DNA of 64,000 nucleotides from Guillardia theta CCMP2712. Taxonomy: Eukaryota > Protista > Cryptophyta. Below, piece after piece: positions 1 to 54,316 of the stretch. Location of the stretch: assembly GCF_000315625.1 (NCBI RefSeq), contig NW_005434555.1, positions 28,490 through 92,489 on the forward strand, written 5' to 3'. Each line of letters starts with the position of its first letter. Position 1 is the first letter of the stretch. Both the position numbers and the translations under genes were made by a program. The notes under the pieces are model-generated. The model did not search any database and had not been told where the DNA came from. It saw only the letters and a program-made list of their open reading frames with translations.

Positions 1-1581
1 GAGAATGAGATGGGTGCGGAAAGACCAAGCAGAGAGCGAGCGATGCAGAGAGAGAAGACGTTGGGCACTGCAGGAGCCGTGAGGAGACTCATGTCCTCTT
101 TCTCTCTTCTCTTCACCTCTGCTGCTTGTCCAGCAGCACTTGTCGGCAGCGCAACAACCGGTCAAGTTTTAGCTCCATCGTGCTTCTTTCGTTGATTTCC
201 GCAGGCAGCGTGTTTGACGTGGACAAAGAATCTTCAATACTGCTGACAGACACAAACTGCTCGTAAAGCGCTTGAAACATCTTCTCCGACGAGTCCTTCA
301 CTCCTTGCACCTGATTGCTTCTTCGTGAGGAATACATGTGAGTATGGAACTTACCTGATGAATCGCCAAATTCACCCGGTCATGCAAATCTTTCATCTGA
401 AAAAAGAAAAGAATCTTACATTCCTCATCATCATCACCACCACCACATCCTCATGGCCTCCTCAGACATTATCGTCTTTATCACTACTGTCGAAGGCATT
501 GTAACACCTGAAATCGATAGACAATCTCTTTTGTTGGCGTCTTATGCTCGAGCTCGCTGTCTGAGCTGCTGCCCTTGAACAACATCTTTCTGGCTGAGTT
601 GGAATCCTGACGAGGAGACAGAAAGTCGTTTTCTGACTTTGCTGCTTCAGTAGCTTGAACGCACTCCCTCGCGAGCTCGAGCTTTAGAGCTGTCGTAGCG
701 AGATGCCTGACATATATCTCAAGTGAGCTCATATAACAATTCCAAGCTGCGTACTCAGCTGATAACGAGCAAAGACTCGAAGTTGCTTCCTGCAGAATCA
801 CTTCAGCCCCTTCAGGTCCTCTGCTCGCATGTGCTCGCATGTGCTCGCCTGCATGGCCGCCAGTTGTTGGGCAAGGGATGAAGCATATGATCGTAGATCG
901 CTAACCGTCGTACCTGCTGAAGTTCAGAATCAACAGCGCACAACGAAAGACAGCAAAGAGATGTCGAAAGAGATGTCGACCTTTTGCATCGCTGATGCAA
1001 GCTTTCTTGTCAGATTTGAGCGTGTCTTGTGTGACAGTCGATTTGACAGGAGAGAAACAGGTTCTTGGACTTGGTAGAGGAGGTTTGGACTTGAACTCAG
1101 AATGTCCATCTTCGCTTTTCCATGCCCGCTGCAATGAACGCAACGGAGGATGCCGCGATGTCTCGTTCGGGAGGAGAGGAGGAGACGGTTCTCGATCGGA
1201 GGACTGCGAGGATTGGGAACTTTGATAGTCGAACTCACTTCTTCGAGAGAACGATGTGGAAGGAAGCTTGGGCTCAGGTTGCAAGGCGTGTGGCCTGGGG
1301 GATCGAGGAGAGGTTTGAAAAGCACGAGCCAAGTTTGAGAGAGCACGAGTAGGAGGGATCTGACTTGAAGCTGTAGGTTGACCTCCTTGCACTGAGTCAG
1401 CGCGCAGCTGCGATATTTGACGATCCCAAACAAGGACAGCATTCCTCACGGCAGTCCCCCCAGCCTCGCCTGAGCCTCCTGCTCCTGCTGCCGCCTCCAT
1501 GCCTCTCGCCTCCATGCTCGGTGTGTTGTAGTAGCCTGCTGCGCCTCTTCCTCTTCCGCCTCCATCTCCTCCCTCCGCCAT
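1..1581 (-). CDS. Hypothetical multi-exon protein, Ser/Pro-rich N-terminus; continues past the window start
   Basis: ATG at 1581 (MAEGGDGG...) in ORF 901-1638, followed by minus-strand exon-like ORFs 484-840 and 113-337 separated by short GT-AG introns. No family motif recognised. Confidence 0.5.
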
Positions 1582-1994
1582 TTCTTCCTTGATGGCTCTA
1601 GTCAACCGCCCGTTATTTCGGCCGCGGGCCTCCAACAAAGGCAGGCGGCTCGGAGCGGCCGGTCTCAGTCACTCAAAGTTACGCTCTGCTTGGTTGGAGT
1701 AGAGGTGTTCGCTGCCTTTTCTGTTTCCTAGTAGTACCTTGTTGAGGCGGGTTTGTAGGATCAGTCAATACACCTTCTACAGTCTTCTCTTCTTGCCGTA
1801 TGGGCAGGATCGAGGAGATGGCGAACAGAAGGAGAATGGAAAGAGGGATGAACGAATAACGATGTGTGAGAAATGAAGAGATCACGATGAGACGAGAGAG
1901 AGAAAGAGTGAAAGGATGAGATAGATGAAATTTTGTGGATGAGGAGAAGGTATTCCTCTTCTCCTCCTTTCGCACTAAATCAGCCGCTGCAGTT

Positions 1995-3297
1995 ATGGTG
2001 CTGAAGGTAGAGAAAAGAAGCGTCAGAGTTGAGGTTCCCAATGGATCCAACCTGCTGTTTGGATCGTTCTCGATGCAGGTAGCACAACGGATGTTCAACA
2101 CAATCGGCTGACTCCCAGCCAGGTCTGGGTGAAACCCAAGTCCTGGAGCGACGAAGAAGGCTACCAGCGAGAGCCCGGATGGCCTGTCATCCTCTGCAAG
2201 AGCAGGTGAGCATTCAAGGACAGGACAGTTAGCCTCACTGTAGCACGAAGGAGCTGGACAGATGGGTTTGGCATGTATGGAAGTCCTCCGAACACGATTC
2301 ATGCGTACATCAATGAATGGAACAAGAACAACGTGTCTGCGAGGTGACTGCGCAACGAGACCTGCCAGCATGAACGGTGTCTGCAGCATCGACATCAACA
2401 AGTGGAGCTGCATCCTCATGACCTACCACTTCAAGCCGGAAGGAGGGGTCCATGCCATCCGCTGAGAGCCGTCGAGAGCATGCTGATATGATTTACTAGG
2501 TGCTTCAACTGTATGTCAATGGCAAGCTCGTAGGAAGCAGAGACGGTCTGCCGCCAATGAGGAAGAATGATGCGGTGCAGTGAATGTGCTGGTCTCAGCC
2601 TTGTGTGACCCTCATGCAGCCGCTTGTCATCGGGAGCACACAATGGGGGGACATGGGCTGGTACGCATTCCATGGAAGCATCGGCCCTGTTGGTCTCCTC
2701 CTCGTCCTTCGAGGCCTCACTTGAGTCAGGTGACCTTCTGGAATCGTGCGCTCAAGGAGAGTGAAGTTGGACGGGTGATGGATCGGCATCCTGTTAGGGG
2801 AGAGGGTAAGAGAGGAGACTGGTTCTCTTCGCACCTGACTGATTGAACATGACAAGATGTGGTTCTAAGTTTAGAGCTCAACGAGACGAACTCGAAGGAA
2901 GCGATCGACTCGAGTGCATCGGCCAGCAATGGCTTGTACATGGACAGCCTGACGCCCATCAACAGGTTACCAGCTTATGGTTCAGTCCTCATCTTTTCGC
3001 TTCTTCTATTTGCAACCTCATTGGCTGTTCATAACTTCCCTTTTCCTTTTCGTAACCCCCCCTATATTGCATATTGCCATGTGCTCACTGATGGGACATC
3101 GTTCTTATGTCGAGGATTTGCTAATGCTCTGCAGGTCACAACTACCATTCGATGAAGATGGTTCCTTGCCGTGGGAGAAGAACAAGGACAGCACAGATAT
3201 AATCCCTTCATGGTTGAACACGCGGACGATGTTAATGGGTGTGGGAGGTTCTGTTGTGCTGATATTTGTCATGAGGCGCTTACTTAAGACGTCTTGA
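1995..3297 (+). CDS. LamG/concanavalin A-like (Laminin_G_3) domain protein with C-terminal transmembrane anchor
   Basis: Spliced translation: FSMQVWVKP...WTDGFGMY...IHAYINEW...IDINKWSCILMTY...LQLYVNGKLVG...PLVIG...FHGSIG...VTFWNRALKESEV, which follows the LamG pattern. Ends MLMGVGGSVVLIFVMRRLLKTS*. Confidence 0.75.
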
Positions 3298-3430
3298 CGT
3301 TCATTGATTGAGTGAAATAACTTCATCTTCTTTGTGTTGAAGCACACTATACATACATATTAACAGCGAACAAGGTCAGGCACACGCAGAAGCTGATGGA
3401 GAGACATCAACATCAGCCTCCTTCCTGTTA

Positions 3431-4037
3431 GCTAGCGCATCAAACGAATCAATAAGCCCACTTATAGACCATCGAGGGGTTGGGCAGGCTAGTGCAGGCC
3501 ATCACACACATCTCCGTTCCGGTTGCAAGCTCAACGTCTGGTGTCTGCACAGACAGCTGGGGGTTGACGTTGAGGAGCTGCTTCACTGTAGTCGAGAACT
3601 TTCCTGTCAAGAAGGCTCAGCCCCTAGTCGTCGCCACCAACAACACCCGACCTGCGATGGAGGCGAGCGTCTCCCCGGCCATGGTGTGGTAGACAGGCCC
3701 GACCTTGATGATGTCGCCCACGGCGAGGTTCATGTCGGGATCTGGCACGCGAGTTCTGAGGCGGCAGTGAGAGCAAGTCGCAAGTCAAGATGATGATCAT
3801 TACGGGTTTGCATTCCACAGGTTGAGCCAGTTGGTGCTCAGCTGATACCTGCGGTGAGTCAGGTCGACCGCACAAGCTCCATCAACCGACCTTCGTGTGA
3901 GGGTTGTCAAGGTGTCCATGGGCACAACGGTGTAGGCGCAGAGCTCAATCTTCAAGCTCAAGGTGCTGGTGAGTGGTGGGACGATGCGTTTCGAGTCCCC
4001 ACAGGAGAAGACCCAGTTGAAGGTGTGACCCTCGTCG
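3431..4037. repeat. Outer inverted repeat, left arm (LysM cassette; partner ~36694-37300)
   Basis: Near-identical reverse complement of 36694-37300 (paired coordinates sum to 40731), including three introns. Confidence 0.95.
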
Positions 4038-5383
4038 CCTCTCAAGGGGAAGTACTTGAACAAGTAGGTCACTTCCTTCTCCCCGTTCTGATAAGTGGTG
4101 CTGTTCACCAGTGTGATGTTTCCCCTCAGCGGGCCTTGTACATCAACTCTGGGAACATAGTTGGAATAACACATCACGTGCATCGAATACTCAGTTCCGA
4201 CAAAGGCACGTTGGACCGTTGAGGGCGCCTGCAACGTCCATTTCGAATTTGGAAGCAAGATTCCAAACTTGATGGCTGACATAGGAGAAACCTTGTTTGC
4301 ACAACCATATAAAGTGGTCTGTTCCGTCTGCGCATAGAAGAAGGCATAGAGGTACTGGGTTGGTCCACCCAGCACGATAGGGTCGAGTAGGTTGTTTGCC
4401 TTGGGAGTCCAAGAGATCTTGTAGCAAGCATTCTCCGTAGAATTTGTGGGGCAGGGCTCCGGGTCCACACGCATGCCAATGGGTATTCCAGGATCAACTG
4501 CGACGAAGAATTTGGCCCTGCTGCCATAGTTGAAGGTTATGGCGGCCACGTGAACCTCGAGGGGCTCTTCAAGGAAAACTCCTCGATTAATCTGAGTGTT
4601 CATGTTGTACATGCCGAAGTCAAACACATTGATCGACTTCCCATTGATCACTTCCGTTCGCCCCGGCGTCAAGACACAAGGCTGAGTCACTCCACATGTG
4701 AACGTCTGAGCTGGAAAGGTCTGGAACTTCGGGGCACCAAGAAATGGAGTGAAATCAATCTTGGGCGTGAGCTCAAAATAAGGGTTACCGCAAACAACGA
4801 AATGAAACGTCTTGTTGCAAGCTGAGTTGTTCGAAGGCAGATTTGCAAACATGTACTCGGCTGACATGGTCATGTTGATGATGCCCGGCTTGACAGTGAC
4901 TGATTCTTGCGCTGTCAAGTTCCATGAGAAGGTCAGCAACGAGACGTTGTTGTTGGGGCGAGAGAACTTAGACCAGGCTGTCGCTGTGGCAGGGGGAGTA
5001 TAGGTGGGGTTCATGAAGTCCAAATTGGACCAGATGGTAGGCCTGAGAAGGAAGGCAACCTCGTTGGGGGTTGCGGTCTCATACGAGTTGATTCGCATGG
5101 TGACTGCCCCGTAGACAGGATGCATGGCGGCAACAGAGAAGGTGAACTTTTCCAGGAATGAGACGTTGTACCAAGCATCTGCACACTGCTGAACGACAGG
5201 GCAAGTAGGGAGGTACAAGGGCGAGGTACAAGGCTTCGTGGGGCTGACCCAGGAGGTGTTCTGACCATGAGAAGTGGGCAAGGAAGAGAGGAGGAGGAGG
5301 AGAGAAGACAAGAGGTGGGAGGAGCTTGCGAAACAGCTCCAGGAGCGCACGCACCGCTGCATGCCGCTTCTCTCACTCGGCAT
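3449..5383 (-). CDS. Secreted protein A: signal peptide, beta-rich Ig-like region, two C-terminal LysM domains
   Basis: Hydrophobic leader LLSSLLLLLSSLPTSHG in ORF 3800-5428. Spliced C-terminus CAYTVVPMDTLTTLTRRYQLSTNWLNLWNANP...YHTMAGETLASIAGKFSTTVKQLLNVNPQL...LATGTEMCV...YKWAY* matches tandem LysM. Confidence 0.8.
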
Positions 5384-5685
5384 GCCCAGTACAGACCCTC
5401 TGCTCGAAAGGTCAAGCGACAACATCAAAATTGTCTTTAAATTTCACTATGCAATTTCAAATATTTATAGTCTCATTTACGGGTATTGGACCCAATTGAG
5501 ATGAGATTTTGACAAGATGGGAGTACAAAGGGTCGGCATGAGAGTTTGACGAGAAGAGGGGAGGAAGAGGAAAGGAAAGAGGAACGACGATAGAAGCAGA
5601 GAGGCAGCTGAGGACAGGAGAAGCTTGATACCAGGAAGAACAATACGAGCATCAGAAGCTACTTCCAGTGAAAAGACGAATCGTG

Positions 5686-8600
5686 ATGTCGAGATCGTTT
5701 CTTCTCTGCATTGTGCTGCTTCTGGCTGGTCCAGCTGATTCGCAAGGTCAACTAGGTGAGTCTAGTCGCATGCCTTGTGCTCGTTTCAAACTCTCTGACC
5801 GGCTCCTCCAGCCTCTGCCCTCAGCGGCACTTTCCGCTATGGTCATTTGTTCTGGGACGCGATATCAGGAAATCGCGTGCAGTTCACCGTGGAGGCTGCT
5901 TTCACTCGCGTTGTGGATACAGGGTACTTCCGAGGGACGGAAAGGGACGGGTACGCGCAGATCGGAGACATGGTGGTGATGGTAGGACGAGAGACGCCCA
6001 TGTTTGATTTCGGGGACGGCTTCATATTGGACAGGCTGACGATGAAGATCATCGCATACTCGATCGAGAGCAACTGGATTTTAGGTCAGGCAGTGTTCGA
6101 GCATGTTTACGCTACTCCCAACAACGGCGGGTCACCTTGGGTCGTGAAGTTCTCAGGATGCTGTCGGATCTCGAACCTGCTGCAAGGAGGGAACCAGCCG
6201 TGGCTGCTGCTTGGCGAGGTTGACCTGCTCCGGAGCGTCAGCTCTCCGCGATCTTTCGTTCCTCCCATGATCGGAGGGAAGTACTGTCAGAATGCTCAAT
6301 ACGGAGACTACGTCACCGTCTTCATCCCTGCGGCCATGAGAGACCCGCAGGGTCGGTCTGTGTCTGCTCCCTACCTGAAAGTGGACGAGCCTACCCAGAC
6401 AAACACGCTGACACAGTTCGGCGATCAGACGGGCAACGGCATCGCCATGCTTCCGCTGAGCTACCACATCGCTACATCTGCAGAGCAGTGCGTCATTGGA
6501 CAAAATGTTGACTACTTGTTAGGGTTGCGAGGAGAACTGATAGTATGAGACAGAACGGGCTGCGTTGCTTGGGGTACTTGATACAGTCGCATGTCAACGT
6601 CCCTGCGTCCACGGTAATCTCACTCCCCTCATACGCTCTTGTCCTGTCTGTGTGCCACCAACATGGTGGGAGGAAGCGCTGACGAGCGGGTGTGGGGTCA
6701 GATTGAAGGCGTGGTCAGAATCGACTCGGCAGAAGGAGGAGTCGTGCTCTCCACGGGATCAAGCTCCGCGACTTGTCAAGCAAGCAAGAGCTGCGAGATA
6801 TCAATGATGTACTGAATGTGCTCGTTATGCTCCGAGAGGTGACGATGTTGTGATGTCAGCTACGTGAAAGTGAACGAGACACACGTGACGGTCGGACACG
6901 AGCTGCAAATCGACAGTAACAACAATTTTAGCTTGTCCGTTGTTGCATTTGCCATGGCGGTAATGCTTCGATGCTCTCGCGCTTCTTCGTGCTCGGCCGT
7001 AGAGCGGTAGTTGCTCACTTGGCTTGCAGGAGAAGCTGGCAGTGGGTCGCTGCATGCACTTGGCGGTAGTTCGCCATTCGTTCTCTCAGAGCTCGAAGTA
7101 CTACTCGACCTACAAAGTCTACGTCAACGGGTGTGATGATCCCTGCCCTTCCTCGATACTAGTTGCTGACGTGGCGCGCGAACCTCCGTGCAGGCAAGTG
7201 CTGAGCAAGGGAGAGTATCCTCCGTGCCAAGCAGGAGGAGGGTGCACGGGAGGGCGACGCCCGGGGATTGCGCTCAAAGCCTTGTCGGAAGGAGAATCGA
7301 ACCCGGTGAAGCTTGTCAAGCAGGAGTGACGCGGTGGACTCATGTTGACTGCAGGTCGAGGGTCCTCGCACGTCATACTCGACTGACTCCATGGGGTCGG
7401 GAGCCTACCTTCTGTTCGGAGGATATCGAGGAGCGGCGGGTCCCCCGTCCTACTTTCACGGGTGAGCCTGGACGCTGAGGAGTGAGGGAAGAATGTGAGC
7501 GATGCTGTGCAGATCGCTACGAGAATGGCGGTTCTGGCTGGGAGAAAGGAACGAAGGAGAGATAGTGCGGTGGTACCAGAGGCAGATTGAGCCGTCCTTG
7601 TCCAACAGCTATGGAGACCCAACTTCCCTGTACGGGCAGAGCATGACAAGTGCGACCGACTACCAGATAGCTTCCCAGCTGCTGCTTCTGTACAGCTTTG
7701 ACTGGAGTAAGGCATCGGCGGCAGACAGCTCATGTCCAGCCTACAGGACGACCTGCCGATACTCGCAAGTGAGGCCGACGTACCCGATGGGGGTAGACCA
7801 GTCGAACTACATCCTTAAGACTGACGTAGCGAACCCGAGAGTCTCGCATGCGAGCCAGAAGTGTGTACAGGCGCCCTCAGACTCCTCGGTCAGCCCTTAC
7901 GCTCTGTCGCTGCAGCTTCTTCCGGGCTACAACCAGTTGACCGTCTACTTGTCATGGGATGCCAACCTGACCGGAGTGCCTGTCGACATCGTCTCGCAAA
8001 CGATCGAAGCTGTGAGCTGCAGCGGCGTCAGTCAGTTCAAGGTCGGGAGCTTGACCATCAACGAGCCGAGCTTGGAGTTCTCCGGCTTCTTCTCAAGCTC
8101 AGGCTCTGCCGATGCCTCCACTAGCCTCCCACCGATGATGGCCAAGTTGTCGACGTTGAGTGTGACCGCGGGAACGTACCTGGAGCTGACCGTGACGAGC
8201 ACGGTGACCTCGTCGAGCGACTTGTCGTCGCTGCAGGTAGGCGAGAGGTGGAGCCGGGGAGGGTGCTGACATGCGTGTTGAAAAGCTGCTGCTGGACAGC
8301 GGCAGGTCGCCGAGCACGATGTTCTTCCACGCCGCGAGGTCGACGACGTCGACGACAAGTCAGAGTGTGTCGATGAAGGTGACGTGGACCCCCTGCCAGC
8401 AGGACCTGGGGATCAACTTCATCTGCTTCCAGTCGCATGCTCGCTTCCTCAACGGCTCGCTCTGCTCCAACCAGCTCGACCGATCATGCAAGTCGAACGC
8501 TGACTGCTCGTCTAACGGTCTGTGCATCGCCAACTACGCGACGGTCGCCATGTCTCCTCTCAAGTGCCTAGGCATCAACGTCATCGTGGAAGATGCTCCC

Positions 8601-40292: not shown

Positions 40293-40629
40293 AGCCTCTT
40301 CGCTCCCAACTTCTCTTTGCACTTTCCCCGACAAACCACTCCTCCCACCCCCGTGTGGTCAAATCACCACCGGTCATTTCCAGACAAATACCAAGAGGAT
40401 GGTAGGGGTGGTCACCCTCCCCCATTAGGGCAATGCGTCTCTAACCAAAGCAAGCAGCCAGATCCCTTCTCCATCTGCCCTCGTTCCTCCCTCCCTCCCT
40501 CCCTCCCCTCCCTCCTTCCTTCCTCCCCCTCCCCTGCCTCCCTCCCTCCCTCTCCTCTGTCCCTCCTCCCTTCCCTCCCTTCCTCTCATCCACCTCGTTT
40601 CTTTCGGGGCATTGGGCATCCACGCTGAG

Positions 40630-43600
40630 ATGAAGTGTCATGATGTGATACTTGTTCTCTGCTTCTTGGCTCAACCTCTGCACGGCGAGGAGAAGCAACA
40701 AGAGGAGAGATATCCCTCCGACTCTGTGCAAAGATTCGTAGAAGAATACTTCAAGACTTCGTCGAGACACACTCTCTGTCTCCTCTGGGGCCCCTTGCCG
40801 AGGTGGTTTGCTCCCTCTTCTCAACTCTGTCACTCCGTCCCTTCCTCTCCTCTCCTCTCAGCTCCCGTCTGCCTCCCTCGCTCTTGTCCTCTCCAACCCT
40901 CTTCTCTTCCTTGCTGACCTCTCCTTCCTGCGGCAGGAGTCGTCTCCTGCCGACGTTGCGCAGGGGCTGCGAGGCGATCATGGAAGTTGCCGATGCATGG
41001 GAAGTGGACTTGAGATGCCGGCGCAGCCATGGCCTTGTGCTCAACACGTCGAGCCTGGAAGAGCCGGGGATCGTCTGCGGAGGAGGAGACGAAGTCAGCG
41101 ATCTCCTCCTCGACTCCTCCTGGGGTCTGCCAGATGCTGTCATTTACTCTCTTCCCTTCTCCCCTTCGCTCGAGCCCTTCAGCAATGAGCAGGCGGCACA
41201 GGTTCTGTCCCATCCCCACGACGACCCCCTGACGCACCCGGCAGCTCCGACAAGTCCTGAGGCCCGGGGGTACCCTCCTCTTCGCCTCCCCGACAGTCTT
41301 CCGATCCGCTCCCTCCTTTCTTGACGTCAGCATGCTCCCTGAGAGAAAGTTCTCTGTAGCCTCCCGCCTCTCCCCGAGGAAACTGCCAGTCTCTCGTGCA
41401 GCCTACGCTAGTGACACTTGCTGCCAGGCTGGTGAAACAGAGCCTGGAGGCAGCTGGACTGTGCGTGAAGGATGTGAGCGCACGAGGATCGCCGACATTC
41501 ATGGTATCCTGCTCCTGCTCCCGCTCCCGCTCTTGCTCCATGCTGCTCCCGCTCCCGCTCCATCCTGCTCCTGCTCCTTCTCCTTCTCCTTCTGCTCTTC
41601 CTCGCTTCGACATCATCACCCTCCTCTCTGCAGGTCGGTGTCATGCACGGAATGGGGTTCAGCGACTTCTCCAGCGAGACGATCGTCGGAGGAGGTGAAG
41701 GGGAGGAGGAGGAGATGAAGGGGAGCAGGAGGAGGTGAAGGGGAGGAGGAGGAGGTGAAGGGGAGCATGGAGGCCGAGTATCGAAGGAGAGGCAGATGAA
41801 AGGAGGGGCAGGGGGGGAGGACAGTCTTACAGAGGCTCTCAGGAGCTAGGGAGGAAACTTTTCGATGGTAGACTGGAGAGAAGCGGAGGAGGAACGAGGA
41901 AGCAATGCGGAAAAAGAAAGAAGGGATGGGGAGGAGAAGGGGATTTGAGGAGAAAGGGGAGAGGGAGGAGGAGAGTGATGAGATGGAAAGAAGAGCGCAA
42001 AAAGTCAGAGGAAGTGATGGAGAGGAAGGATATTGCTGTTGGAGGCTCATGAAGGATGACAGGAGACGTGGATGAGAATTTTCCCCACACCCTGACGGCC
42101 ATGGCGGTGAGAGGAGAGAAATGCGAAGAGAGTGCGAGGGAGGACAGAGGAGATGGGAAGCGGAGAGAGGACGAGGAGGGAATCAAGGTGCTGGTGATGA
42201 CGCAAGCGACACACACGTACTACAGGTGCGACGGATGAAGATGAGGAAGAGGAGGGAAGGGGAGGGGAGGCAAGGGAGGATGGGTGGGAGGCGGGGAGAC
42301 GGGGGAGGAGGAGATCAGAGGAAGGAGGAAGGAGCAGATGCAAGAACGAGTAAGAAAGGAGGATGGTGGAGAGGAAACTGTCAAGGGAGAAGAATGACGT
42401 GATGCTTCCAGGTATGTCGCTGGACTTGCAAAATCCCTGGATGAGTATCTAGCGGGGCAGGGCTGGGAGATCATGTCCTCGTCCTCGTCCTCCTCGTCCT
42501 CGTCCTCCTCCTCGTCCTCGTCCTCCTCCTCGTCCTCGTCCTCCTCGTCCTCCTTCTCCTCCTCCTCCTCCTCCTCCTCCTTCTCCTCCTCCTCGTCCTC
42601 TTCCCCTTCCTCGTCCCCGTCCTCTCAGATTCACGTTCGCCTCATCGTCTTCACCGACAACTCGGTCTGTCCTCGTCTCCTCCCGTCGGCTCCTCACCCT
42701 CCCACAAGAATTTCGACCATCACCGGGAGACTTGTCGTGATCTCAAGAGGTATCCCAGCTGGAGCCCTGCAACTCCCAGCTGAACTTCAGTACAGAGTGC
42801 GGGTAGAGCACAAACACGTCCCTCACTGGGGCTGGCCAGGTTGCTCTTGATAGCGTCTTCCTCCTCCCTCTGATTGGACCTGTAGAGCTTGCGCTGAGAC
42901 GGTGGCAGACGTACTTGCAGGCAGACCTCCTCCTCCTTCTTTTCTTCCTCCTCCTCCTTCTTTTCTTCCTCCTCCTCCTTCTTTTCTTCCTCCTCCTCCT
43001 TCTTTCCTCCTCCTCCTTCTTTTTTTCCTCCTCCTCCTCCTCCTCCTCCTCCTCCTCCTCCTCCTCCTCCTCCTCCTCCTCCTCCTCCTCCTCCTCCTCC
43101 TCCTCCTCCTTCTTTTCTTCCTCCTCCTTGTCTTTGTCTCTTGTCTCTTGTCTCTTTTCTCTTCCTCGTCCTCGTCCTCGTCCTCTTCCTCGACCTCCTC
43201 TACTTCGTCCTCGTCCTCGTCCTTTTCGTTCTCCTTCTGATTCTGTATCCTTTAGTTCTCCTCTCTTTCCCCCCCCCCTCTTTTCCTTCTACCATTTGAC
43301 TTTCCAGCAGGCGGAGGAAGCAATCCGAGACGTCGACTTCGTTTTTCACATTGGTAACACAGAAGATGAGAAGAGAGGCAGGAGGGGGAGGTGGAACGAG
43401 ATGAAGATCTTGAGGAGCGAGGAGGAGCAAAGGATAGGGAGGTAACGAGGAGAGAGAGAGGAGAGCAAGAGGACAAGGAAGAGAGAAAAAGAAGGAGAGG
43501 AGAAAGGGGAAGAGGGTAGCCTTGGAAGATTCACAGTAGGAGCAGCACAGCATTAGGATGTGATTGACTCCGCAGACTGCGATGCTCGATTGGTCAGGAA

Positions 43601-45221
43601 CATCGCTCCTCTCATCTTGTGGGGCAAGGTGTAGGCTCTGAACTGCTGCTCGTGCTCCTGCCCCTGCTCCTGCTCGTGCTCTTGCTCGTGCTCTTGCTCG
43701 TGCTCCTGCTCCTGCGCATCTTCTCATTCTCATTAACATCTCAGTGTTTCTCCGCTCTCTTTCTCTCGCGCCCTCTCCTCCCCATCAAACTTTCATCTCA
43801 CCGCTGCACAGTCCTTTGGAGTCGTGCATGCGGACAATGCCTACTACTCGGGGGAGGAGGTGGTCTCGCTGGAGGAGGGGGAGGGCAGGTGAGGGATAGG
43901 ATTACCAGTTGCCTCACACGCTGAGAGAGGAGCAGAGAGACGCGGGACCTTCCTTTCTTCCTCAACGAGCTGAGGTCGCAACCACGAGGATATTTCGATC
44001 AGGAAAGAGCCTTCCTCTCTTGCTCTCCTGCTCTCCTGCTCTCCTGCTCTCCTGCTCTCCTGCTCTCCTGCTTTCCTCCTCCCTTGCATACACCTCACTC
44101 TCCCATTCTTCCTTGTGTCTTCCTGTCTCCTCCTCCTGCCCTCCTCTCCCACTGTCCTCCTGCATCTCATTTTCTCTCCTGACTCTACGACAGGCTTGCT
44201 TCCCTCGCTTTTGCCGAAGAGATCCTCCGTATCACGTGGCGGACAAGCAGGTCAGGGAGGGAGGGAGGGAGGGAGGGGAGGGAGGGGAGGGAGGGGAGGG
44301 AGGGGAGGGGAGGGGAGGGAAGGGAGGGAGGAGAGAGAGGGAGGGAGGGGGGAAGGGAGGGAGGGCGAAGGTGTTGGAACCTGACGATCATGAGCAGAGA
44401 TGCAGTATGCTTTCCCATGAAGGACTTTACTACTTCTACTCTGGTATCCTCCTGCTTCCTGTCTCCTCCTCCTCCTCCTCCTCTCCCCCCTCCCTCCTCT
44501 TTTCTTGTCATCGTCTCCCTTCCCGCGCTTGCTTTTGTCCCTCAGATCTGCTCGAGCTGCCCTTCATACCTGCCTGCTTACCTGCCTGCTTTCCTGTGTC
44601 CTCTCCTCCCCTCCATCCCTGAACCACCACAACCACCTCCTCCTCCTGCCTCCTCCTGCCTCCTCCTGCCTCCTCCTGCCTCCTCCTCCTCCGATGGCTG
44701 TTCTGAATTCTCCTCATGCTTTCTCAAGGCTTTTTCGGGGGCCCAGCAAACTGGATGCTCAACGCACTTCACACTCTTGTTGCCTTCACTGCAGAGGTGA
44801 TCCTTTTCTCTCTTCCCTCTTTTGCCTCCTTCTTGCTGGTCCTCGCTGGTCCTTGCTGATCCTTGCTGGTCCTCGCTGGTCCTTGCTGGTCCTTGCTGGT
44901 CCTTGCTGGTCCTTGCTGGTCCTTGCTGGTCCTTGCTGGTCCTTGCTGGTCCTTGCTGGTCCTTGCTGGTCCTTGCTGGTCCTTGCTGGTCCTTGCTGGT
45001 CCTTGCTGGTCCTTGCTCCTCCTCCCTCTCCTTCCCTTTTCTCCCTCAGGGTTTCAGCTCGTCTTGCTTCTGCTCCATCTCCTCACATGATCCTCCCCTC
45101 CCCCGTTTCTCACTGATTGGAGCTGGCAGGATGTGACGAGAGGGTTTGTTGGAGCTCGAGTTGATGATGAAAGTTATCTCAACCGCTTCTTCTGGGAACA
45201 GCCGCCCGACCGCATTCTCAC
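40630..45221 (+). CDS. Signal peptide + methyltransferase-like domain + GT6 (ABO/alpha-1,3-Gal(NAc) transferase family) glycosyltransferase; 3' end probably lost in the gap
   Basis: MTase-like motifs LRQVLRPGGTLLFASP, SLEAAGL, DENFPHTLTAMAVR. GT6 motifs IKVLVMTQATHTYYRY, LIVFTD, WP.LALRRW, DFVFHIDCD, GVVHA..YY, EGLYYFYSGFFGG, DDESYLNRFFWEQPPDRIL. The GT6 exons join in frame. Confidence 0.82.
44830..45016. repeat. (CCTTGCTGGT)n decamer repeat in a GT6 intron
   Basis: Roughly 18 tandem units. Confidence 0.92.
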
Positions 45222-45475
45222 GTAACTCTCCTCCTGTCCTCTCCTCTCTCCTCTCCTCTCCTCTCTCCTCTCTCCTCTCTCCTCTCTCCTCTCTCCTCTC
45301 TCCTCTCTCCTCCCTCCTCCCTCCTCCCTCCTCCCTCCTCCCCTCCCCTTTCCCCTTTCTTTCTCCCTTCCCTCTNNNNNNNNNNNNNNNNNNNNNNNNN
45401 NNNNNNNNNNNNNNNNNNNNNNNNNNNNNNNNNNNNNNNNNNNNNNNNNNNNNNNNNNNNNNNNNNNNNNNNNNN

Positions 45476-46664
45476 GGGGCGTTGGGTGGGGGGGAAGGGA
45501 GGGAGTTCCCACCTCCTGGATCGTTTCAGAGGGGTCGCCCTTGGCAGCGACGACACAGATGGGAACCTTCAGATTCTTGGCAAAGTCCTTCTCCTGTTCC
45601 CGAAGCACATCAGATCCTCCTCCTCCCCCCTCACTTTCTCCTGCTTCTCCTGTCTCTTCTACTCCTCTTCCTGTGCCTCCTGATCCCCCTGCCTCTCTTT
45701 CTCTCCCTCCTCTCGCCTTCTCCTTCTTCTTCTTCACCTTTTCCTTCTCCTCAGCGCCTCCCTCCCCCCCCCTCCCTCCCTTCCTCCTCCTCCACGTCTC
45801 AAGGTCCTCTTCATCCTCCTTCTAACCTTGTCCCAGAAGGCCGCATGCACGGCGATGGTGCTGCGAAGTCCCTCGGTGGCCTCACCACCGAAGCGCATGC
45901 AGATGTATCCTCCCCAGCAGAAGCTGCCGCGAGCATGAGTACAGCAGCTGCTATAGGAGGGGAAGGCGTACCCCATGGTGCTGTGGGAGGTGACGCCCTT
46001 GCCCGCAAGGTACTTCTTGCACACCTGCAGCTGGAGAGGGAGGTCAGAACAGAGCTTGGAGGTGAACATGACTGAGGGGGAGACGAGCCATGCAAGAGGC
46101 ACGTGTGGCGTTCGAGTCGACGGTGGTGAAGCAAGAAAAGGGCCTACATGTGTGTACCTGGCTCAGACACTCTGTGTAGAAGAAGCTGCCATCGGAACCA
46201 GCGATCCAAGCTGAGAGGTTGTCCTCAGGCTTGGGAGGGAACTTGTCGATAGGCCATGGCTTGTTGTTGTTGTTGACGAAGATGTCGGGGACGACAACGA
46301 GGAAGCCGTAGGCAGCAAGACGATCACAAACTTGCTTCACCTGAGGGCACTGGTCCTGAAAGCCGAAAATGTCGTAGATGACAATGACGGCATGGGATCC
46401 TTACAACGAAATATAAGAACCTAACCATCATACACGCAAATTCATCATAGACTCTGTTTGCTCTGACTGGTTCCACATCAAACTTTACCCTTAGACACCC
46501 GCCTCTGAACGAACAAACAACAAGGCGGGGAGGAGTGAGAGTGTTAGAGATCAACCTGATCCAGTGACGTACATGTTGTTTCCCTCGAACGTTTCCATCT
46601 TGCCAACAGGGTTGTACTCTGCCTGCAGCGGCTTACCCGCCTCCAAACAGCATGCCGACGCCAT
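45476..46664 (-). CDS. Dienelactone hydrolase family protein (3' end in the gap)
   Basis: MASACC, VIVIYDIFG, CDRLAAYGFLVVVPDIF, nucleophile motif G.CWGG, VPICVVAAKGD. Confidence 0.88.
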
Positions 46665-48506: not shown

Positions 48507-50208
48507 ATGATAAGGAGCGTCAATATCTAGGAATTCAGCTGACTGCACTACTCTGCCACTAGCGTTGAGAACATTCCAGACGATCCACGAACTCTCCTGG
48601 TCCTGCCCATGTCCTTCGAAAGGACAAGTTTGTCTTGTAGCTCGTATTGTTGAGGTCTGGGCAAACGCACCAGCAGTCTCTCCCCCACTGTTCTCCCCTA
48701 AGAATGTCGGCGGCAGAGATGTTGCAGGTCAAACGGCTGCAAAAGCGGCGAACCGTGAGCAGACTAAGTCGCTCGTTGAGCTTCTGGACGACCTTGTACC
48801 TCGGCTGGTGAAGTGCAGGCGGCACAGGTCAGGGCTCAAGTCAGGACGGAGCGTCAAGCAGCTGCTGGAGGACCTGAGGGTTCACATCGGTAGGCTGCTG
48901 AAGACTCCGATGGAGGTGAAGGTGATAGACGAAGTGAGCATAGACGAGGGCATCACGGACCTGGTACTGAGGAGGGGGTTCTTGGAAGCGCAGGGGACGC
49001 TGATGATGACTGTGAAGCTCCCTTGCTTCACCATCCTCTCCTTGAGTCATGGCATCCGCAAGTACTTCTCGGGGATCCCGTTCTCCGGCCCTGTGGGCCA
49101 GTCCCTTGCTCACTTCGTCCCTGCATGGGACCTCCCCAAGTTCAGTGAGTTCGTGAGGGTCCTTGTAGAGTCCGGGGGCCGGCAGATCTCAAACGCCGAG
49201 TTCTGCCTCCTGACCTTCAGGTCGAACCTCATCCAGTGTCTTCCCTGCACCGTTGAGAGCGCCTGGCTGCAAGACGACCGCTATGCCTTCCTCTTCTTCA
49301 GCCTGCCTGAGCCTGGACCCCCCAGCAAGTTCCCCTCCAATGTCGACCTGGACGCGCTGGAGACGATGTACATGTACGACGACCTGGCATCCTCCATCGC
49401 GCCGTGGGATCTGGAGAAGGAGATGCACAACATTGAGATCGAGCAGCTTGACAGCACTTTCTGCGTCGACTGGAACTCTCTCTGGAGCAACTTGGAGATC
49501 AGAGCGGCACTGGACAGCGTGAGTGAGCAGATGGGCGCAAGGCCGACGCAGCTTGCGGCGAGGAGGCTGCAGGTGAAGCAGCAGGTGAAGGACGAGAACG
49601 GGCCGGTAGTGGTGTCGGAGTTCCGGATCAAACTGCCCTCGTTCCTGGGGTCGTACCAGAGCGAGTGGTTCGGGTGGAAGCAGGTCAGGCTAGACGGGAC
49701 AATCTTCAAGATCGGGGATGGAACTTTCGCCACCTTCTGCGCACATTCAGACTCGCCGAAAGACGCTCTGCGCATCACTGAGTTCAAGTTCAAGCAGGTT
49801 GGGCGAGGATGGTCGGTCGTGGGAGCCGTAGTGGGGCCGGTGGGAGGGGAAGGGGAAGTAGGAAGGATGAGAGGTGGAAGAAGGAGAGGAGAGGAGAGGA
49901 GAGAAGAAAAAAGGAGAGAAGAGGAGAAAAAGGAGAGAAGAGAAGAAAAAAGGAGAGAAGAGGAGAAAAAGGAGAGAAGAGAAGAAAAAAGGAGAGAAGA
50001 GGAGAAAAAAGGAGAGAAGAGGAGAAAAAATGAGAGAAGAGGAGAAAAAAGGAGAGGGGAGGAGAGAAGGAGGAAGGGAGGAGAGGGGAGTTAGTGATGA
50101 AGGTGTGCAGGAGGGCAAGATGATGCGATGTTATCATACAAGGAGCATCACGATAACAAAGGAGAATCGATTGTTTCAAGGTCACGTGTATCCCACGCGG
50201 TCGGGCAA
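48507..50208 (+). CDS. Putative bHLH-like + PAS domain protein
   Basis: ANREQTKSLVELLDDLVP...RSVKQLLEDLRVHIGRL resembles helix-loop-helix. LMMTVKLPCFTILSLS...GQSLAHFVPAWD resembles PAS. Long exon within ORF 48565-50094; both ends uncertain. Confidence 0.5.
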
Positions 50209-50659
50209 GTGAGTTCAAGGTCGATGCTGGTGTGAGGAGAAGTGACGGGAGAGCAGGCAGCAGTTTGAGTTCAAGCTCGTCGCTCAGAGGGTGGAGGAGA
50301 ACGGAAAGGTGAGGAGGCTGAGGGAGAGGAGGGAGCGATCGGCTCTCCTGTGACGAAGATGACAGGAGGTGGAGGGGGGGGGGGGGGGCTGGGCCGAGGA
50401 GTGGGAGGCACCGGAGGAATGTAAAGTTGAAGGACGAGGAAGAAGTGTCTGCTGATTNNNNNNNNNNNNNNNNNNNNNNNNNNNNNNNNNNNNNNNNNNN
50501 NNNNNNNNNNNNNNNNNNNNNNNNNNNNNNNNNNNNNNNNNNNNNNNNNNNNNNNNNGAGGAGGAGGAGGAGGAGGAGGAGGAGGAGGAGGAGAAGGAAA
50601 GGAGGGGGAGGGGGAGGAGGATTGGGGAGGGAGGAGATGCGATCTAGAGGAGTCTGACG

Positions 50660-52104: not shown

Positions 52105-54316
52105 CTGCGATAAGAATGAGATCATAGTACCCCTCTCCCTCTCCCTCTATTCTCATCAGGCGCTCAATTCTGTAAACCCCTCCTTGCTCCCCCATACATC
52201 TCAAGAATGGTTCTGTAAGATTGTCTCATTCCTCGCAAACTCTTTCCCCGCTCTCCATCCCGCCGTCTCTCCGTCCCTGCCTGCCTCGCTCCATCCGTCC
52301 GTCCGTCCGTCCGTCCGTCCGTCCGTCCCTCGCTCGCTCGCTCCCTCGCTCGCTCCCCCTCCCTCGCTCCCTCCTCGCTCCCTCGCTCCCCTNNNNNNNN
52401 NNNNNNNNNNNNNNNNNNNNNNNNNNNNNNNNNNNNNNNNNNNNNNNNNNNNNNNNNNNNNNNNNNNNNNNNNNNNNNNNNNNNNNNNNNNNNNNNNNNN
52501 NNNNNNNNNNNNNNNNNNNNNNNNNNNNNNNNNNNNNNNNNNNNNNNNNNNNNNNNNNNNNNNNNNNNNNNNNNNNNNNNNNNNNNNNNNNNNNNNNNNN
52601 NNNNNNNNNNNNNNNNNNNNNNNNNNNNNNNNNNNNNNNNNNNNNNNNNNNNNNNNNNNNNNNNNNNNNNNNNNNNNNNNNNNNNNNNNNNNNNNNNNNN
52701 NNNNNNNNNNNNNNNNNNNNNNNNNNNNNNNNNNNNNNNNNNNNNNNNNNNNNNNNNNNNNNNNNNNNNNNNNNNNNNNNNNNNNNNNNNNNNNNNNNNN
52801 NNNNNNNNNNNNNNNNNNNNNNNNNNNNNNNNNNNNNNNNNNNNNNNNNNNNNNNNNNNNNNNNNNNNNNNNNNNNNNNNNNNNNNNNNNNNNNNNNNNN
52901 NNNNNNNNNNNNNNNNNNNNNNNNNNNNNNNNNNNNNNNNNNNNNNNNNNNNNNNNNNNNNNNNNNNNNNNNNNNNNNNNNNNNNNNNNNNNNNNNNNNN
53001 NNNNNNNNNNNNNNNNNNNNNNNNNNNNNNNNNNNNNNNNNNNNNNNNNNNNNNNNNNNNNNNNNNNNNNNNNNNNNNNNNNNNNNNNNNNNNNNNNNNN
53101 NNNNNNNNNNNNNNNNNNNNNNNNNNNNNNNNNNNNNNNNNNNNNNNNNNNNNNNNNNNNNNNTCCCCTCGCTCCCTCCGCCTCCCTCCGCTTCCTCCGC
53201 TCCCCCCCCCCCTCCCCTCCGCTCCCCCCCCTCCCCTCCGCTCCCTCCCCTCGCTCCCTCGCTCCCTCGCTCCGGCATGTTCGGCCGCCTTTCTGCTCCT
53301 TCTATGTTCCTCCATAGCTGGAGGGCTCGGTGTCCCATCGGGGCAATATGCAAAACGGCAGGACCATATCCGGTGAAATTAAGTTATTTATTTTAACTTT
53401 CTTTAATCAGGATTTGAAGGAGGTTTCAACAAGAGGCCACAACGAGCGCATATCCAGTGCGACCGTACGGGACCCCCCACCCCCTCATGAAGTACCCCTA
53501 CCCACCTATCATTTTTGACCCCCACAACTAACACCCGCCCACACAAAGCCCTTGGTGCTCTTGTCGTGCCAAAACACTACCTACCCTAAATTTTGACCAC
53601 CCACCCATCCCAGGTGTGGGCAAGGACCCCCTCTCGAGAGCTCCAAGATATCCTTTTCTGGCTCCCCACGTCATGCTCAAGTCACGTTACTGACTACCTG
53701 TATGACTCATGGGTCACGAGTGGGTGGGGGGTCAGCTACAATCCCGACATGCGCACCGTCTAGGGGAGGGGTGGGGTCTAACGATCGGCTGTCAGACTTG
53801 GTCTATTTTTCCTATTGCCTCTATCAGTAAAACCACCAGGTGCAGCTCGGTGGTCAGGAGACCGAGAAGAAGAGAGCTAGAGGGTGGTCCGGAGTATTTT
53901 GGAGTAGGGTACTGAGGAAAAAGGGGGTACTGAATCGATGATCCAGGGGTGGTACAACCCTCTACTCCTCCTTTCTATCGCGGTAGAGCCAAATCCCTCC
54001 TAATAAAATACTTGCCACTGCCACTCCCTCCATTCCTCCGTTACACCCTACCTCCCTCCTCCCTCCTCCCTCCTCCCTCCTCCCTCCTCCCTCCTTCCTC
54101 CTCCATCCTCTCTCCTTTCTCACAGTATATCAAATCCTACGTTCCAAACCTTCCAACTTCTCCAACGCCTAACTCCTCTCTACTTCCATACACATCCCAT
54201 CTCTCTTCCCTCACGCCCTCTAGCACTGCTTGTCTGTTCCCTGCCTCGTACCTCACATCCTTCCTATCGCCTTCCCTTCCCTTCAGGACATCACGCGCTT
54301 GTGACATCCTTGTACC

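What the first reader, a model, noticed from the sequence alone, without database searches (positions are those of the whole stretch)
40630..42225. Methyltransferase-like domain fused in frame upstream of GT6: possible bifunctional glycan-modifying enzyme
Seen: signal-like MKCHDVILVLCFLAQPLHG, then LRQVLRPGGTLLFASPTVF, LVKQSLEAAGL and VGVMHGMG. The single exon 42063-42225 encodes both the domain end (DENFPHTLTAMAVR) and the GT6 start (GIKVLVMTQAT), so the fusion does not depend on a splice guess. Established: RxLxPGGxL is typical of class I SAM methyltransferases. Inference: a secretory-pathway enzyme coupling sugar transfer with O-methylation. The SAM-binding GxG motif looks degenerate (LLWGP), and one junction near 41320-41430 is unresolved.
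Basis: partly seen in the sequence, partly recalled or inferred. Interest (0 to 1): 0.75.

Follow-up and report, generated by a model that had tools for sequence, protein, structure and literature searches.

The report
Blood-group-type glycosyltransferase with doubtful methyltransferase-like head
In the alga Guillardia theta a real blood-group-type (GT6) sugar-transferase gene is preceded on the same strand by six short coding-looking exons carrying one methyltransferase motif. Neither the methyltransferase fold nor the join into one protein could be shown, and the cofactor-binding loop is missing.

Summary
The window is Guillardia theta CCMP2712 nuclear DNA.

**What holds up**
- The GT6 half is real. 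A GT6 profile and a paralogue hit the + strand exon by exon, in order, from 42554 to 45222. The DXD motif (DCD) and the DDES catalytic glutamate are kept.
- The six upstream exons (40630-42225) show coding codon usage in the proposed frames. Frame-keeping GT-AG junctions exist, with intron sizes normal for this genome.

**What does not**
- The methyltransferase reading rests on one 14-residue VLRPGG match in exon C, motif spacing, and weak language-model leads.
- Exon B (88 aa) has no homologue in 1.84 billion proteins, Pfam, NCBIfam, PDB or metagenomes.
- The glycine loop that binds SAM is replaced by LLWGPLP.
- The fusion does depend on a splice guess (41695 to 42062). The exon F frame is closed by TGA at 42050 and has its own ATG at 42056.

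**Limits.** The spliced model was not searched or folded as one piece, by instruction.

**Verdict.** Probably one secretory protein with a dead methyltransferase-like head, but unproven. Moderate interest.

The parts
40630..40802 (+). Exon A: ATG, signal-peptide-like MKCHDVILVLCFLAQPLHG, then the degenerate motif-I position LCLLWGPLP
   Evidence: First in-frame ATG of the open stretch 40429-40914. Codon usage is best in this frame. GT donor at 40803.
40937..41201 (+). Exon B, 88 aa: the core of the putative alpha/beta domain (MEVAD, GGGDEV, PDAVIYS)
   Evidence: Codon usage and the GC1/2/3 pattern look coding. ESM recognition score is 2729. No homologue was found anywhere. The AF2 model has pLDDT 53.
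41245..41355 (+). Exon C with QVLRPGGTLLF, the only real methyltransferase-type motif. The 3' end is uncertain (41325, 41348 or 41355).
   Evidence: hmmsearch gives 6.5 bits and hhalign gives probability 81%, P 1.2e-5, against a profile of 20 G. theta Methyltransf_11 domains. The 43-nt intron 41202-41244 is close to the genome's modal intron size of 47 nt.
41402..41503 (+). Exon D (ARLVKQSLEAAGLCVKDVSARGSPTFM). The 5' end could also be 41390 or 41428.
   Evidence: Codon usage is best in this frame. There are several frame-keeping GT-AG options. A weak colinear match to LKAAGL..DVKV lies about 45 aa after the PGG motif of one G. theta methyltransferase, L014 (E 5.9, not significant).
41634..41694 (+). 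Exon E (VGVMHGMGFSDFSSETIVGG). With exon D it could form the beta6-beta7 hairpin.
   Evidence: Codon usage. Acceptor ends at 41633 and the GTGAAG donor is at 41695.
41736..41738 (+). Stop codon reached if exon E is not spliced. This would be the end of a stand-alone upstream protein.
   Evidence: The open stretch 41478-41735 ends here.
42050..42058 (+). TGA that closes the exon F frame (42050-42052) and an in-frame ATG (42056-42058), the alternative start of a stand-alone GT6
42063..42225 (+). Exon F: DVDENFPHTLTAMAVR, a charged linker (GEKCEESAREDRGDGKRREDEE), then the GT6 start GIKVLVMTQATHTYY
   Evidence: One open frame. Codon usage is best in this frame, including the part before the GT6 start. 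The GT6 start aligns with GKRVTLVSVASGRY of the C4 paralogue.
42412..42839 (+). GT6 exon (YVAGLAKSLDEYL ... IHVRLIVFTDNS ... VPHWGWP) holding an in-frame (TCC/TCG)n tract at 42473-42628
   Evidence: GT6 profile positions 14-64. VRLIVFTD matches LRIVIFTD of the paralogue. No frame-keeping GT-AG intron could remove the Ser tract.
42886..42910 (+). GT6 mini-exon ELALRRWQ
   Evidence: Unique junction through the 46-nt intron 42840-42885.
43256..43353 (+). GT6 exon ending in EEAIRDVDFVFHI
   Evidence: Unique frame-keeping junctions. Similar to LLEDADFLFSI of the paralogue.
43576..43628 (+). GT6 exon with the DXD motif (HI|DCDARLVRNIAPLILWGK)
   Evidence: GT6 profile positions 95-106.
43812..43888 (+). 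GT6 exon SFGVVHADNAYYSGEE... The stretch 43889-44193 after it is unresolved and may hold a further small exon.
   Evidence: hmmsearch i-E 6.9e-6. tblastn E 6e-4 to the paralogue. There are many junction options.
44194..44250 (+). GT6 exon. The frame is uncertain: ACFPRFCRRDPPYHVADKQ fits the GT6 consensus better, while LASLAFAEEILRITWRTS fits the GTGAGG donor.
44398..44443 (+). GT6 exon ...EGLYYFYSG. The 5' end is uncertain.
44729..44796 (+). GT6 exon FFGGPANWMLNALHTL...
   Evidence: Unique acceptor. GT6 profile positions 198-219.
45130..45221 (+). GT6 exon DVTRGFVGARVDDESYLNRFFWEQPPDRIL with the catalytic-Glu motif DES
   Evidence: hmmsearch i-E 1e-8. tblastn E 4e-6. GTAACT donor at 45222.
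45376..45475 (.). Assembly gap (100 N) inside the last intron
45506..45683 (+). Probable last exon (SHLLDRF...ILGKVLLLFPKHIR...) and the stop codon
   Evidence: Frame-keeping junction. The resemblance to the C-terminal ...PKNH... of GT6 enzymes comes from direct reading and my own knowledge. Stop at 45681-45683.

Best explanation
One nuclear gene of Guillardia theta (+ strand, 40630 to about 45683) encodes a protein of the secretory pathway. It has four parts: a cleavable signal peptide; a roughly 230-residue alpha/beta head domain; a highly charged linker; and a complete, probably active retaining GT6 glycosyltransferase. The head domain is a strongly diverged, catalytically dead descendant of a class I SAM methyltransferase. 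It keeps the VLRPGG helix-strand motif, a DAVIYS beta4 and acidic residues at the beta2 and beta3 positions, but has LLWGPLP in place of the GxGxG SAM loop. The GT6 part keeps the DXD motif (DCD), YYFYSGFFGG and the DDES catalytic glutamate. The head supplies what GT6 enzymes otherwise get from a membrane anchor and stem: entry into the ER/Golgi lumen and spacing, or perhaps acceptor binding. It does not methylate.

Shown: the GT6 exons, the coding signal of the upstream exons, the single motif, and the availability of splice junctions.

Inferred: the methyltransferase fold, the loss of activity, the E->F splice, and the location of the protein.
For: **GT6 half.** Hits run in order, exon by exon, to a GT6 profile and to the paralogue GUITHDRAFT_100270.

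**Upstream exons.**
- All six exons score best in the proposed frame. Their GC1/GC2/GC3 pattern matches G. theta coding sequence, while the spacers show no frame preference.
- Every junction has a frame-keeping GT-AG solution. Introns of 43 and 46 nt lie next to the published modal intron size of 47 nt (PMC6260743).

**Methyltransferase signal.**
- Exon C matches the PGG motif of G. theta Methyltransf_11 domains (6.5 bits; hhalign probability 81%, P 1.2e-5).
- The D of DAVIYS lies 25 residues before the R position of the motif once exons B and C are joined, the same spacing as in the Methyltransf_11 consensus as I recall it (direct reading of the sequence; the consensus spacing rests on my own knowledge, not on a tool result).
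- The nearest named ESM-Atlas clusters of exon B, which lacks the motif, are all methyltransferases, but at scores of only 0.79-0.85.

**Analogy with the paralogues.** Both other GT6 genes of this genome are multidomain and begin with a signal peptide or a transmembrane stretch. A GT6 starting at ATG 42056 would have neither.
Against:
- No annotated or transcript-derived protein in the libraries holds exon B or the GT6 exons at 44190-44445 in the length range 132-420 aa.
- Exon B has no detectable similarity to any methyltransferase profile. Own-genome scans with PF08241 and PF13489 do not list this locus.
- The AF2 model of exon B alone has low confidence and Foldseek gives nothing.
- An in-frame ATG with A at -3 lies at 42056, just after a stop. 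Exon E read without splicing ends at a stop at 41736, so a two-gene reading is fully open.
- Frame-keeping GT-AG pairs are common by chance.
Confidence: 0.38

Rival explanations
1. There are two adjacent same-strand genes. The first is a small secreted protein (exons A-E) that ends at the TGA at 41736. The second is a stand-alone, signal-less GT6 that starts at ATG 42056. No fusion exists.
For: - A stop at 42050-42052 and an ATG at 42056, with A at -3, sit just upstream of the proposed acceptor.
- Exon E read through reaches a stop at 41736.
- The beta6-beta7 hairpin of a methyltransferase fold could already be complete within exons D-E (direct reading).
- The acceptor at 42062 has no pyrimidine tract.
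- Very short intergenic spacers occur in this genome. In L006 the 507-aa minus-strand ORF (973..2496) and the GT6 ORF (2495..5725) abut head to head.
- Bacterial GT6 enzymes and most chlorovirus glycosyltransferases lack an anchor (the former from my own knowledge; the latter in PMC9614988).
Against: - A GT6 starting at 42056 would carry a 42-residue charged tail and no signal peptide or membrane anchor. The two paralogues begin with such signals.
- The 368-nt GA-rich spacer resembles the homology-bracketed introns 42226-42411 and 43354-43575 of the same gene.
- A GTGAAG donor follows exon E directly.
Confidence: 0.27
2. The gene is fused, but the head domain is an orphan stem or spacer domain unrelated to methyltransferases. 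The VLRPGG motif is a chance resemblance.
For: - Only 14 residues match any methyltransferase profile.
- Exon B, which should carry motifs post-I to IV, scores below zero.
- It has no homologue in 1.84 billion proteins, Pfam, NCBIfam, PDB or metagenome contigs.
- Motif I is absent.
- A reader who scans many windows will meet chance motifs of this strength.
Against: - The spacing from DAVIYS to the motif, and from the beta1-like LCLLWG (about 100 residues), fits Methyltransf_11 (my reading and my recollection of the consensus).
- The amphipathic LEAAGLCVKDV element follows at the usual distance.
- The ESM-Atlas named neighbours of exon B are all methyltransferases, though weakly.
- The per-exon Pfam search, and the own-genome PF03414 scan, also miss the true GT6 exons of this gene, so these negatives are weak.
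Confidence: 0.2
3. This is the first reader's version: an active bifunctional enzyme that transfers Gal or GalNAc and O-methylates the product in the secretory pathway.
For: - Glycosyltransferase-methyltransferase fusions that work this way exist. In chlorovirus PBCV-1, domain 3 of A064R methylates O-2 of the rhamnose added by domain 2 (PMC9614988).
- Acidic residues at the beta2 and beta3 positions and the PGG motif are kept (direct reading).
Against: - The glycine-rich SAM loop is replaced by LLWGPLP, with a Trp at the position of the first glycine.
- No methyltransferase profile recognises the domain.
- The fusion itself is unproven.
Confidence: 0.08
4. The upstream 'exons' are not translated at all, being a 5' leader or decayed sequence. 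Alternatively, the whole locus is a decaying, unexpressed GT6 copy.
For: - No protein from annotation or transcriptomes matches exon B, or the GT6 exons that were tested.
- The 43889-44250 part of the GT6 region has no clean junction solution.
- A microsatellite sits in frame inside a GT6 exon.
Against: - The codon-usage and GC3 signal is consistent in all six upstream exons and in the GT6 exons.
- The catalytic motifs are intact.
- Exon B is recognised as protein-like by the ESM Atlas.
Confidence: 0.07

Closest known systems
Chlorovirus PBCV-1 A064R (two rhamnosyltransferase domains plus a C-terminal class I SAM methyltransferase domain)
   Same: One polypeptide combines glycosyltransferase and methyltransferase-type domains that act on the same glycan (PMC9614988).
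   Different: - In A064R the methyltransferase is C-terminal, readily recognised by BLAST, and shown to be active.
- Its glycosyltransferase domains are not GT6, and the protein is cytosolic.
- Here the methyltransferase-like part is N-terminal, unrecognisable to profiles, lacks the SAM loop and follows a signal peptide.
GT6 family (vertebrate ABO A/B transferases and alpha-1,3-galactosyltransferase; bacterial BoGT6a)
   Same: The order of conserved blocks is the same: an N-terminal beta strand, VFTD, DXD, H.D..YY, YYxGxFFGG and HDES-type motifs.
   Different: - Vertebrate enzymes have a type II anchor and a stem. Bacterial ones have no extension and lack DXD (PMC3961637 abstract).
- Here there is a signal peptide plus a globular head, a roughly 52-residue Ser tract in a loop, and many tiny exons between microsatellites.
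The other two GT6 genes of G. theta: GUITHDRAFT_100270 (C4) and the GT2-GT6-GT11-like gene on C12
   Same: In each, GT6 is one module of a longer protein that begins with a signal peptide or a transmembrane stretch (scan note s1-432896).
   Different: The partners differ: an unknown N-terminal region plus an unknown 470-aa C-terminal region on C4, and GT2 plus GT11-like on C12. Neither contains anything like exons A-E.
Catalytically dead class I methyltransferase folds (pseudo-methyltransferases)
   Same: The fold-level motifs are partly retained while the SAM-binding glycine loop is lost (direct reading of the sequence).
   Different: Known cases are identified by clear homology to active relatives. 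No such relative was found here.

Membership tests
Class I SAM-dependent methyltransferase (Methyltransf_11-like) | Significant match to a family profile | tested here: not met
   - Pfam and NCBIfam, run exon by exon, gave no family.
- Own-genome scans with PF08241 and PF13489 list 73 and 24 matches but none in C119.
- A home-made profile of 20 G. theta domains hits only exon C, at 6.5 bits.
- The joined model was not searched, by instruction.
Class I SAM-dependent methyltransferase (Methyltransf_11-like) | Motif I glycine-rich loop (E/D-x-G-x-G-x-G) after beta1 | tested here: not met
   The position about 100 residues before the PGG motif reads LCLLWGPLP (40780-40802).
Class I SAM-dependent methyltransferase (Methyltransf_11-like) | R-V-L-K-P-G-G type motif leading into beta5, about 25 residues after the D-x-V-x-S beta4 | tested here: met
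   QVLRPGGTLLF at 41251-41283 (hhalign probability 81%). PDAVIYS ends exon B, 25 residues upstream once B and C are joined (direct reading).
Class I SAM-dependent methyltransferase (Methyltransf_11-like) | Seven-stranded Rossmann-like sheet (order 3-2-1-4-5-7-6) | tested here: inconclusive
   Only exon B could be folded by reference: pLDDT 53, an alternating helix/strand pattern, and no Foldseek match. The whole domain has no reference, so it was not folded.
Class I SAM-dependent methyltransferase (Methyltransf_11-like) | SAM binding and methyl transfer | not testable with these tools
   This needs recombinant protein.
Glycosyltransferase family 6 (PF03414) | Profile or homologue match over the catalytic domain | tested here: met
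   - There are colinear exon-by-exon hits to a profile of four PF03414 proteins, with best i-E values of 1e-8 and 6.9e-6.
- There are also hits to the paralogue whose Pfam GT6 E-value is 4.7e-27.
- The Pfam model itself does not reach these short exons.
Glycosyltransferase family 6 (PF03414) | DXD metal/donor motif and the catalytic Glu of the HDES block | tested here: met
   HI|DCD across the 43353/43576 junction, and VDDESYLNRFF at 45130-45221.
Single-polypeptide glycosyltransferase + methyltransferase (A064R-like) | Both domains on one transcript and in one reading frame | not testable with these tools
- No transcript-derived protein was found.
- A frame-keeping junction exists, but so do an independent ATG and stop.

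The most novel reading that the evidence does not exclude
A eukaryotic alga makes a luminal GT6 enzyme whose N-terminal domain is a working, highly unorthodox methyltransferase that binds SAM without a glycine loop. The protein would then build and cap methylated alpha-Gal/GalNAc (blood-group-like) epitopes on cryptophyte surface glycans. That would be the first GT6-methyltransferase enzyme and a cellular counterpart of chlorovirus A064R.
Probability: 0.07. Interest if true: 0.7.

Novelty: new variant of a known kind. Interest (0 to 1): 0.33.

Why it matters
GT6 enzymes make the ABO and alpha-Gal epitopes and are best known from vertebrates and a few bacteria and phages. Guillardia theta carries three GT6 genes, each wired to different partner domains. 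That points to modular, possibly virus-derived, glycan assembly proteins in cryptophytes.

If the head domain is confirmed as a dead methyltransferase fused to GT6, it would be an example of an enzyme fold reused as a luminal stem or acceptor-binding module. If it were active, it would be a new bifunctional glycan-capping enzyme. As it stands, the locus is mainly a gene-model problem: an apparently unannotated GT6 gene hidden among microsatellites.

Tried and rejected
**Searches with exon B (88 aa) that found nothing useful**
- phmmer against 1.84 billion representative proteins gave only a repetitive bacterial adhesin, which is spurious.
- The own-genome search found no paralogue.
- Metagenome contigs held no relative.
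- PDB by sequence gave nothing below E 0.4.

**Family and profile searches of the upstream exons**
- Pfam and NCBIfam, exon by exon, gave nothing.
- PF08241 and PF13489 scans of the genome do not list this locus.
- A local HMM and hhalign, using 20 G. theta methyltransferase domains, hit only exon C.
- Local BLAST of the exons against those domains, four GT6 proteins and the C12 locus gave only the PGG motif.

**Structure and language-model tools**
- AF2 on exon B gave pLDDT 53, and Foldseek on that model was meaningless.
- The ESM Atlas gave leads only, all below 0.9.

**Protein library searches**
- A search for a protein holding the GT6 exons at 44190-44445 found none in the 132-420 aa range, so longer products remain unseen.
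- The other two searches went on identifying the organism and GT6 relatives and on a neighbouring gene.

**RNA reads**
I did not try again, and read laying was therefore not used.

**Left out by instruction**
- No search or fold was run on the spliced (joined) model.

**Idea rejected**
- IVCGGGDEV in exon B is not the true motif I. It lies only about 45 residues before the PGG motif, whereas the usual spacing is about 90.
Full report
**Source of the window.** The window is contig C119 of an 87.1-Mb, 669-contig assembly. A paralogue elsewhere in the assembly is 100% identical to the NCBI protein GUITHDRAFT_100270 of Guillardia theta CCMP2712. The published assembly figures agree: 87.1 Mb, 669 scaffolds, 52.9% GC, mean intron 106 nt and modal intron 47 nt (PMC6260743). 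This is therefore nuclear DNA of a cryptophyte alga. Here short exons lie between microsatellite-rich spacers.

**Observation.** Two points need correcting.
- The motif reads QVLRPGGTL, with Gln at the canonical Arg position.
- Exon 42063-42225 does encode both DENFPHTLTAMAVR and the GT6 start GIKVLVMTQAT. However, its frame is closed just upstream by TGA (42050-42052) and contains an ATG at 42056. So the fusion does depend on a splice guess, namely 41695 -> 42062.

**The GT6 half is real.**
- The genome-wide PF03414 scan found two other GT6 loci (C4 and C12) but missed this one, because its exons are too short.
- I used the intronless C4 paralogue (1076-aa ORF; Pfam GT6 E 4.7e-27) and a profile built from four PF03414 proteins.
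- With these, the + strand gives colinear hits at 42554-42748, 43569-43604, 43806-43868 (i-E 6.9e-6), 44407-44448, 44725-44790 and 45124-45222 (i-E 1e-8).
- Most junctions have a single frame-keeping GT-AG solution. They restore HI|DCD (the DXD motif), YYFYSG|FFGG and VDDESYLNRFF (the catalytic-Glu block).
- Two oddities remain. A (TCC/TCG)n tract at 42473-42628 is in frame and cannot be removed by any frame-keeping GT-AG intron. The stretch 43889-44250 has no unique solution.
- A 100-N gap lies in the last intron.

**The upstream exons look coding.** I trained a codon table on 28.9 kb of G. theta ORFs. All six proposed exons then score best in the proposed frame:

| Exon | Coordinates |
|---|---|
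| A | 40630-40802 |
| B | 40937-41201 |
| C | 41245-41355 |
| D | 41402-41503 |
| E | 41634-41694 |
| F | 42063-42225 |

- The margins are 0.16-0.32 nats per codon, within the range of true coding chunks. The exons show the genome's GC2 < GC1 < GC3 pattern. The spacers show no frame preference.
- Every junction has a frame-keeping GT-AG solution. The 43-nt B/C intron, and a 46-nt option for the 'unresolved' C/D junction, lie next to the modal intron size of 47 nt.
- Such junctions are easy to find by chance, so this only shows the model is possible.
- The ESM Atlas 'recognition' value of exon B (2729) is in the range of real proteins.

**The methyltransferase reading is weakly founded.**
- Exon B should carry most of the Rossmann core, yet it has no homologue:
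  - not in 1.84 billion representative proteins, where the one hit is a repetitive adhesin;
  - not in its own genome, in metagenome contigs or in the PDB by sequence;
  - not in Pfam or NCBIfam.
- Own-genome scans with Methyltransf_11 and Methyltransf_23 list dozens of loci but not this one.
- Against a profile of 20 G. theta Methyltransf_11 domains, only exon C matches: 6.5 bits, hhalign probability 81% and P 1.2e-5, over 14 columns.
- AF2 on exon B alone gives pLDDT 53, and Foldseek finds nothing.

In favour of the reading:
- Joining exons B and C puts PDAVIYS (beta4-like) exactly 25 residues before the motif, as in the Methyltransf_11 consensus as I recall it.
- A hydrophobic beta1-like LCLLWG lies about 100 residues upstream.
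- LEAAGLCVKDV...TFMVGVMHG follows like the usual alphaE-beta6-beta7 (my reading of the sequence).
- The nearest named Atlas clusters of exon B are all methyltransferases, at scores of 0.79-0.85. The tool itself calls these scores leads only.
- The exon-wise Pfam test, and the own-genome PF03414 scan, also miss the genuine GT6 exons, so these negatives are not strong.

Even on the favourable reading, LLWGPLP stands where the glycine loop should be. An active SAM site is therefore unlikely.

**Fusion or two genes?**

For one gene:
- The exons are on the same strand, in order, with coding signal.
- A GTGAAG donor follows exon E directly.
- The GA-rich spacer resembles the homology-bracketed introns of the same gene.
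- Only exon A provides a signal peptide.
- Both other GT6 proteins of this alga are multidomain and start with a signal peptide or a transmembrane stretch. Scan note s1-432896 reports the C12 gene as spliced and expressed.

For two genes:
- Exon E read through ends at a stop at 41736.
- The ATG at 42056 has A at -3.
- The acceptor at 42062 lacks a pyrimidine tract.
- Intergenic spacers in this genome can be very short.
- A methyltransferase fold could already be complete within exons D-E.

No annotated or transcript-derived protein matched the parts of this locus that I tested, in the searches I could run. A neighbouring gene, by contrast, does have transcriptome-derived relatives. So the gene is probably weakly expressed or simply unsampled.

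**What could not be done.**
I stopped there, so no reads were laid.
The joined protein was neither searched nor folded. That is exactly the step that would decide the fold question.

**Verdict.**

| Reading | Confidence |
|---|---|
| One secretory protein: signal peptide, dead methyltransferase-like head, charged linker, active GT6 | 0.38 |
| Two separate genes | 0.27 |
| Fused gene with an orphan head unrelated to methyltransferases | 0.20 |
| Upstream part not coding, or a decaying locus | 0.07 |

The closest known architecture is chlorovirus PBCV-1 A064R, two glycosyltransferase domains plus an active C-terminal methyltransferase (PMC9614988). This locus differs from it in domain order, GT family, location in the cell and the missing SAM loop. 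The solid finding is a GT6 gene with no matching protein in the libraries searched (apparently unannotated), with an unusual N-terminal extension. The methyltransferase label and the bifunctional mechanism remain hypotheses.

Noticed in passing
window 42473-42628: A (TCC/TCG)n microsatellite lies in frame inside the GT6 exon 42412-42839. No frame-keeping GT-AG intron can remove it, so about 52 serines are probably translated in a loop between the first helix and the VFTD strand of the GT6 domain.
   Followed up: partly
L006:2495-5722 (G000 C4, GUITHDRAFT_100270): This is an intronless 1076-aa ORF with GT6 in the middle. It has a roughly 300-aa N-terminal region with a TM-like stretch, and a roughly 470-aa C-terminal region with no Pfam family. 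The NCBI model (948 aa) starts 128 residues later and drops the TM-like stretch. GT6-domain relatives of 758-848 aa exist in Logan, JGI and ENA data (P0003-P0005).
   Followed up: partly
L005:6599-9792 minus strand (G000 C12): An ORF with a signal-peptide-like start and a GT2 domain (Pfam E 3.7e-5) lies directly upstream of GT6 exons on the same strand. This is the locus of scan note s1-432896 (GT2+GT6+GT11-like).
   Followed up: partly
window 43889-44250: This is the variable region of the GT6 gene. The 44194-44250 exon reads in the GT6-like frame (ACFPRFCRRDPPYHVADKQ) only with weaker donors. The strong GTGAGG donor at 43889 puts it in another frame. A further mini-exon (…DLPFFLNELRSQPRGYFDQERAF, about 43936-44010) is possible.
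   Followed up: partly
window 48742-50308: A gene without any Pfam family has transcript-derived relatives: P0006, 98% identical, from ENA; and P0007, 90% identical, from MMETSP, which also shows an intron at 49801-50107. No NCBI G. theta protein appeared in the length range searched.
   Followed up: partly
L010, L013, L016, L017, L025 (G000 C7, C72, C2, C70, C142): Several ordinary Methyltransf_11 ORFs of G. theta begin with signal-peptide-like hydrophobic N-termini. Methyltransferase folds addressed to the secretory pathway or the plastid therefore do not seem rare in this alga.
   Followed up: no
window 45376-45475, 50458-50557, 52393-53163: Three assembly gaps (runs of N). The first lies inside the last intron of the GT6 gene and could hide sequence.
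   Followed up: no
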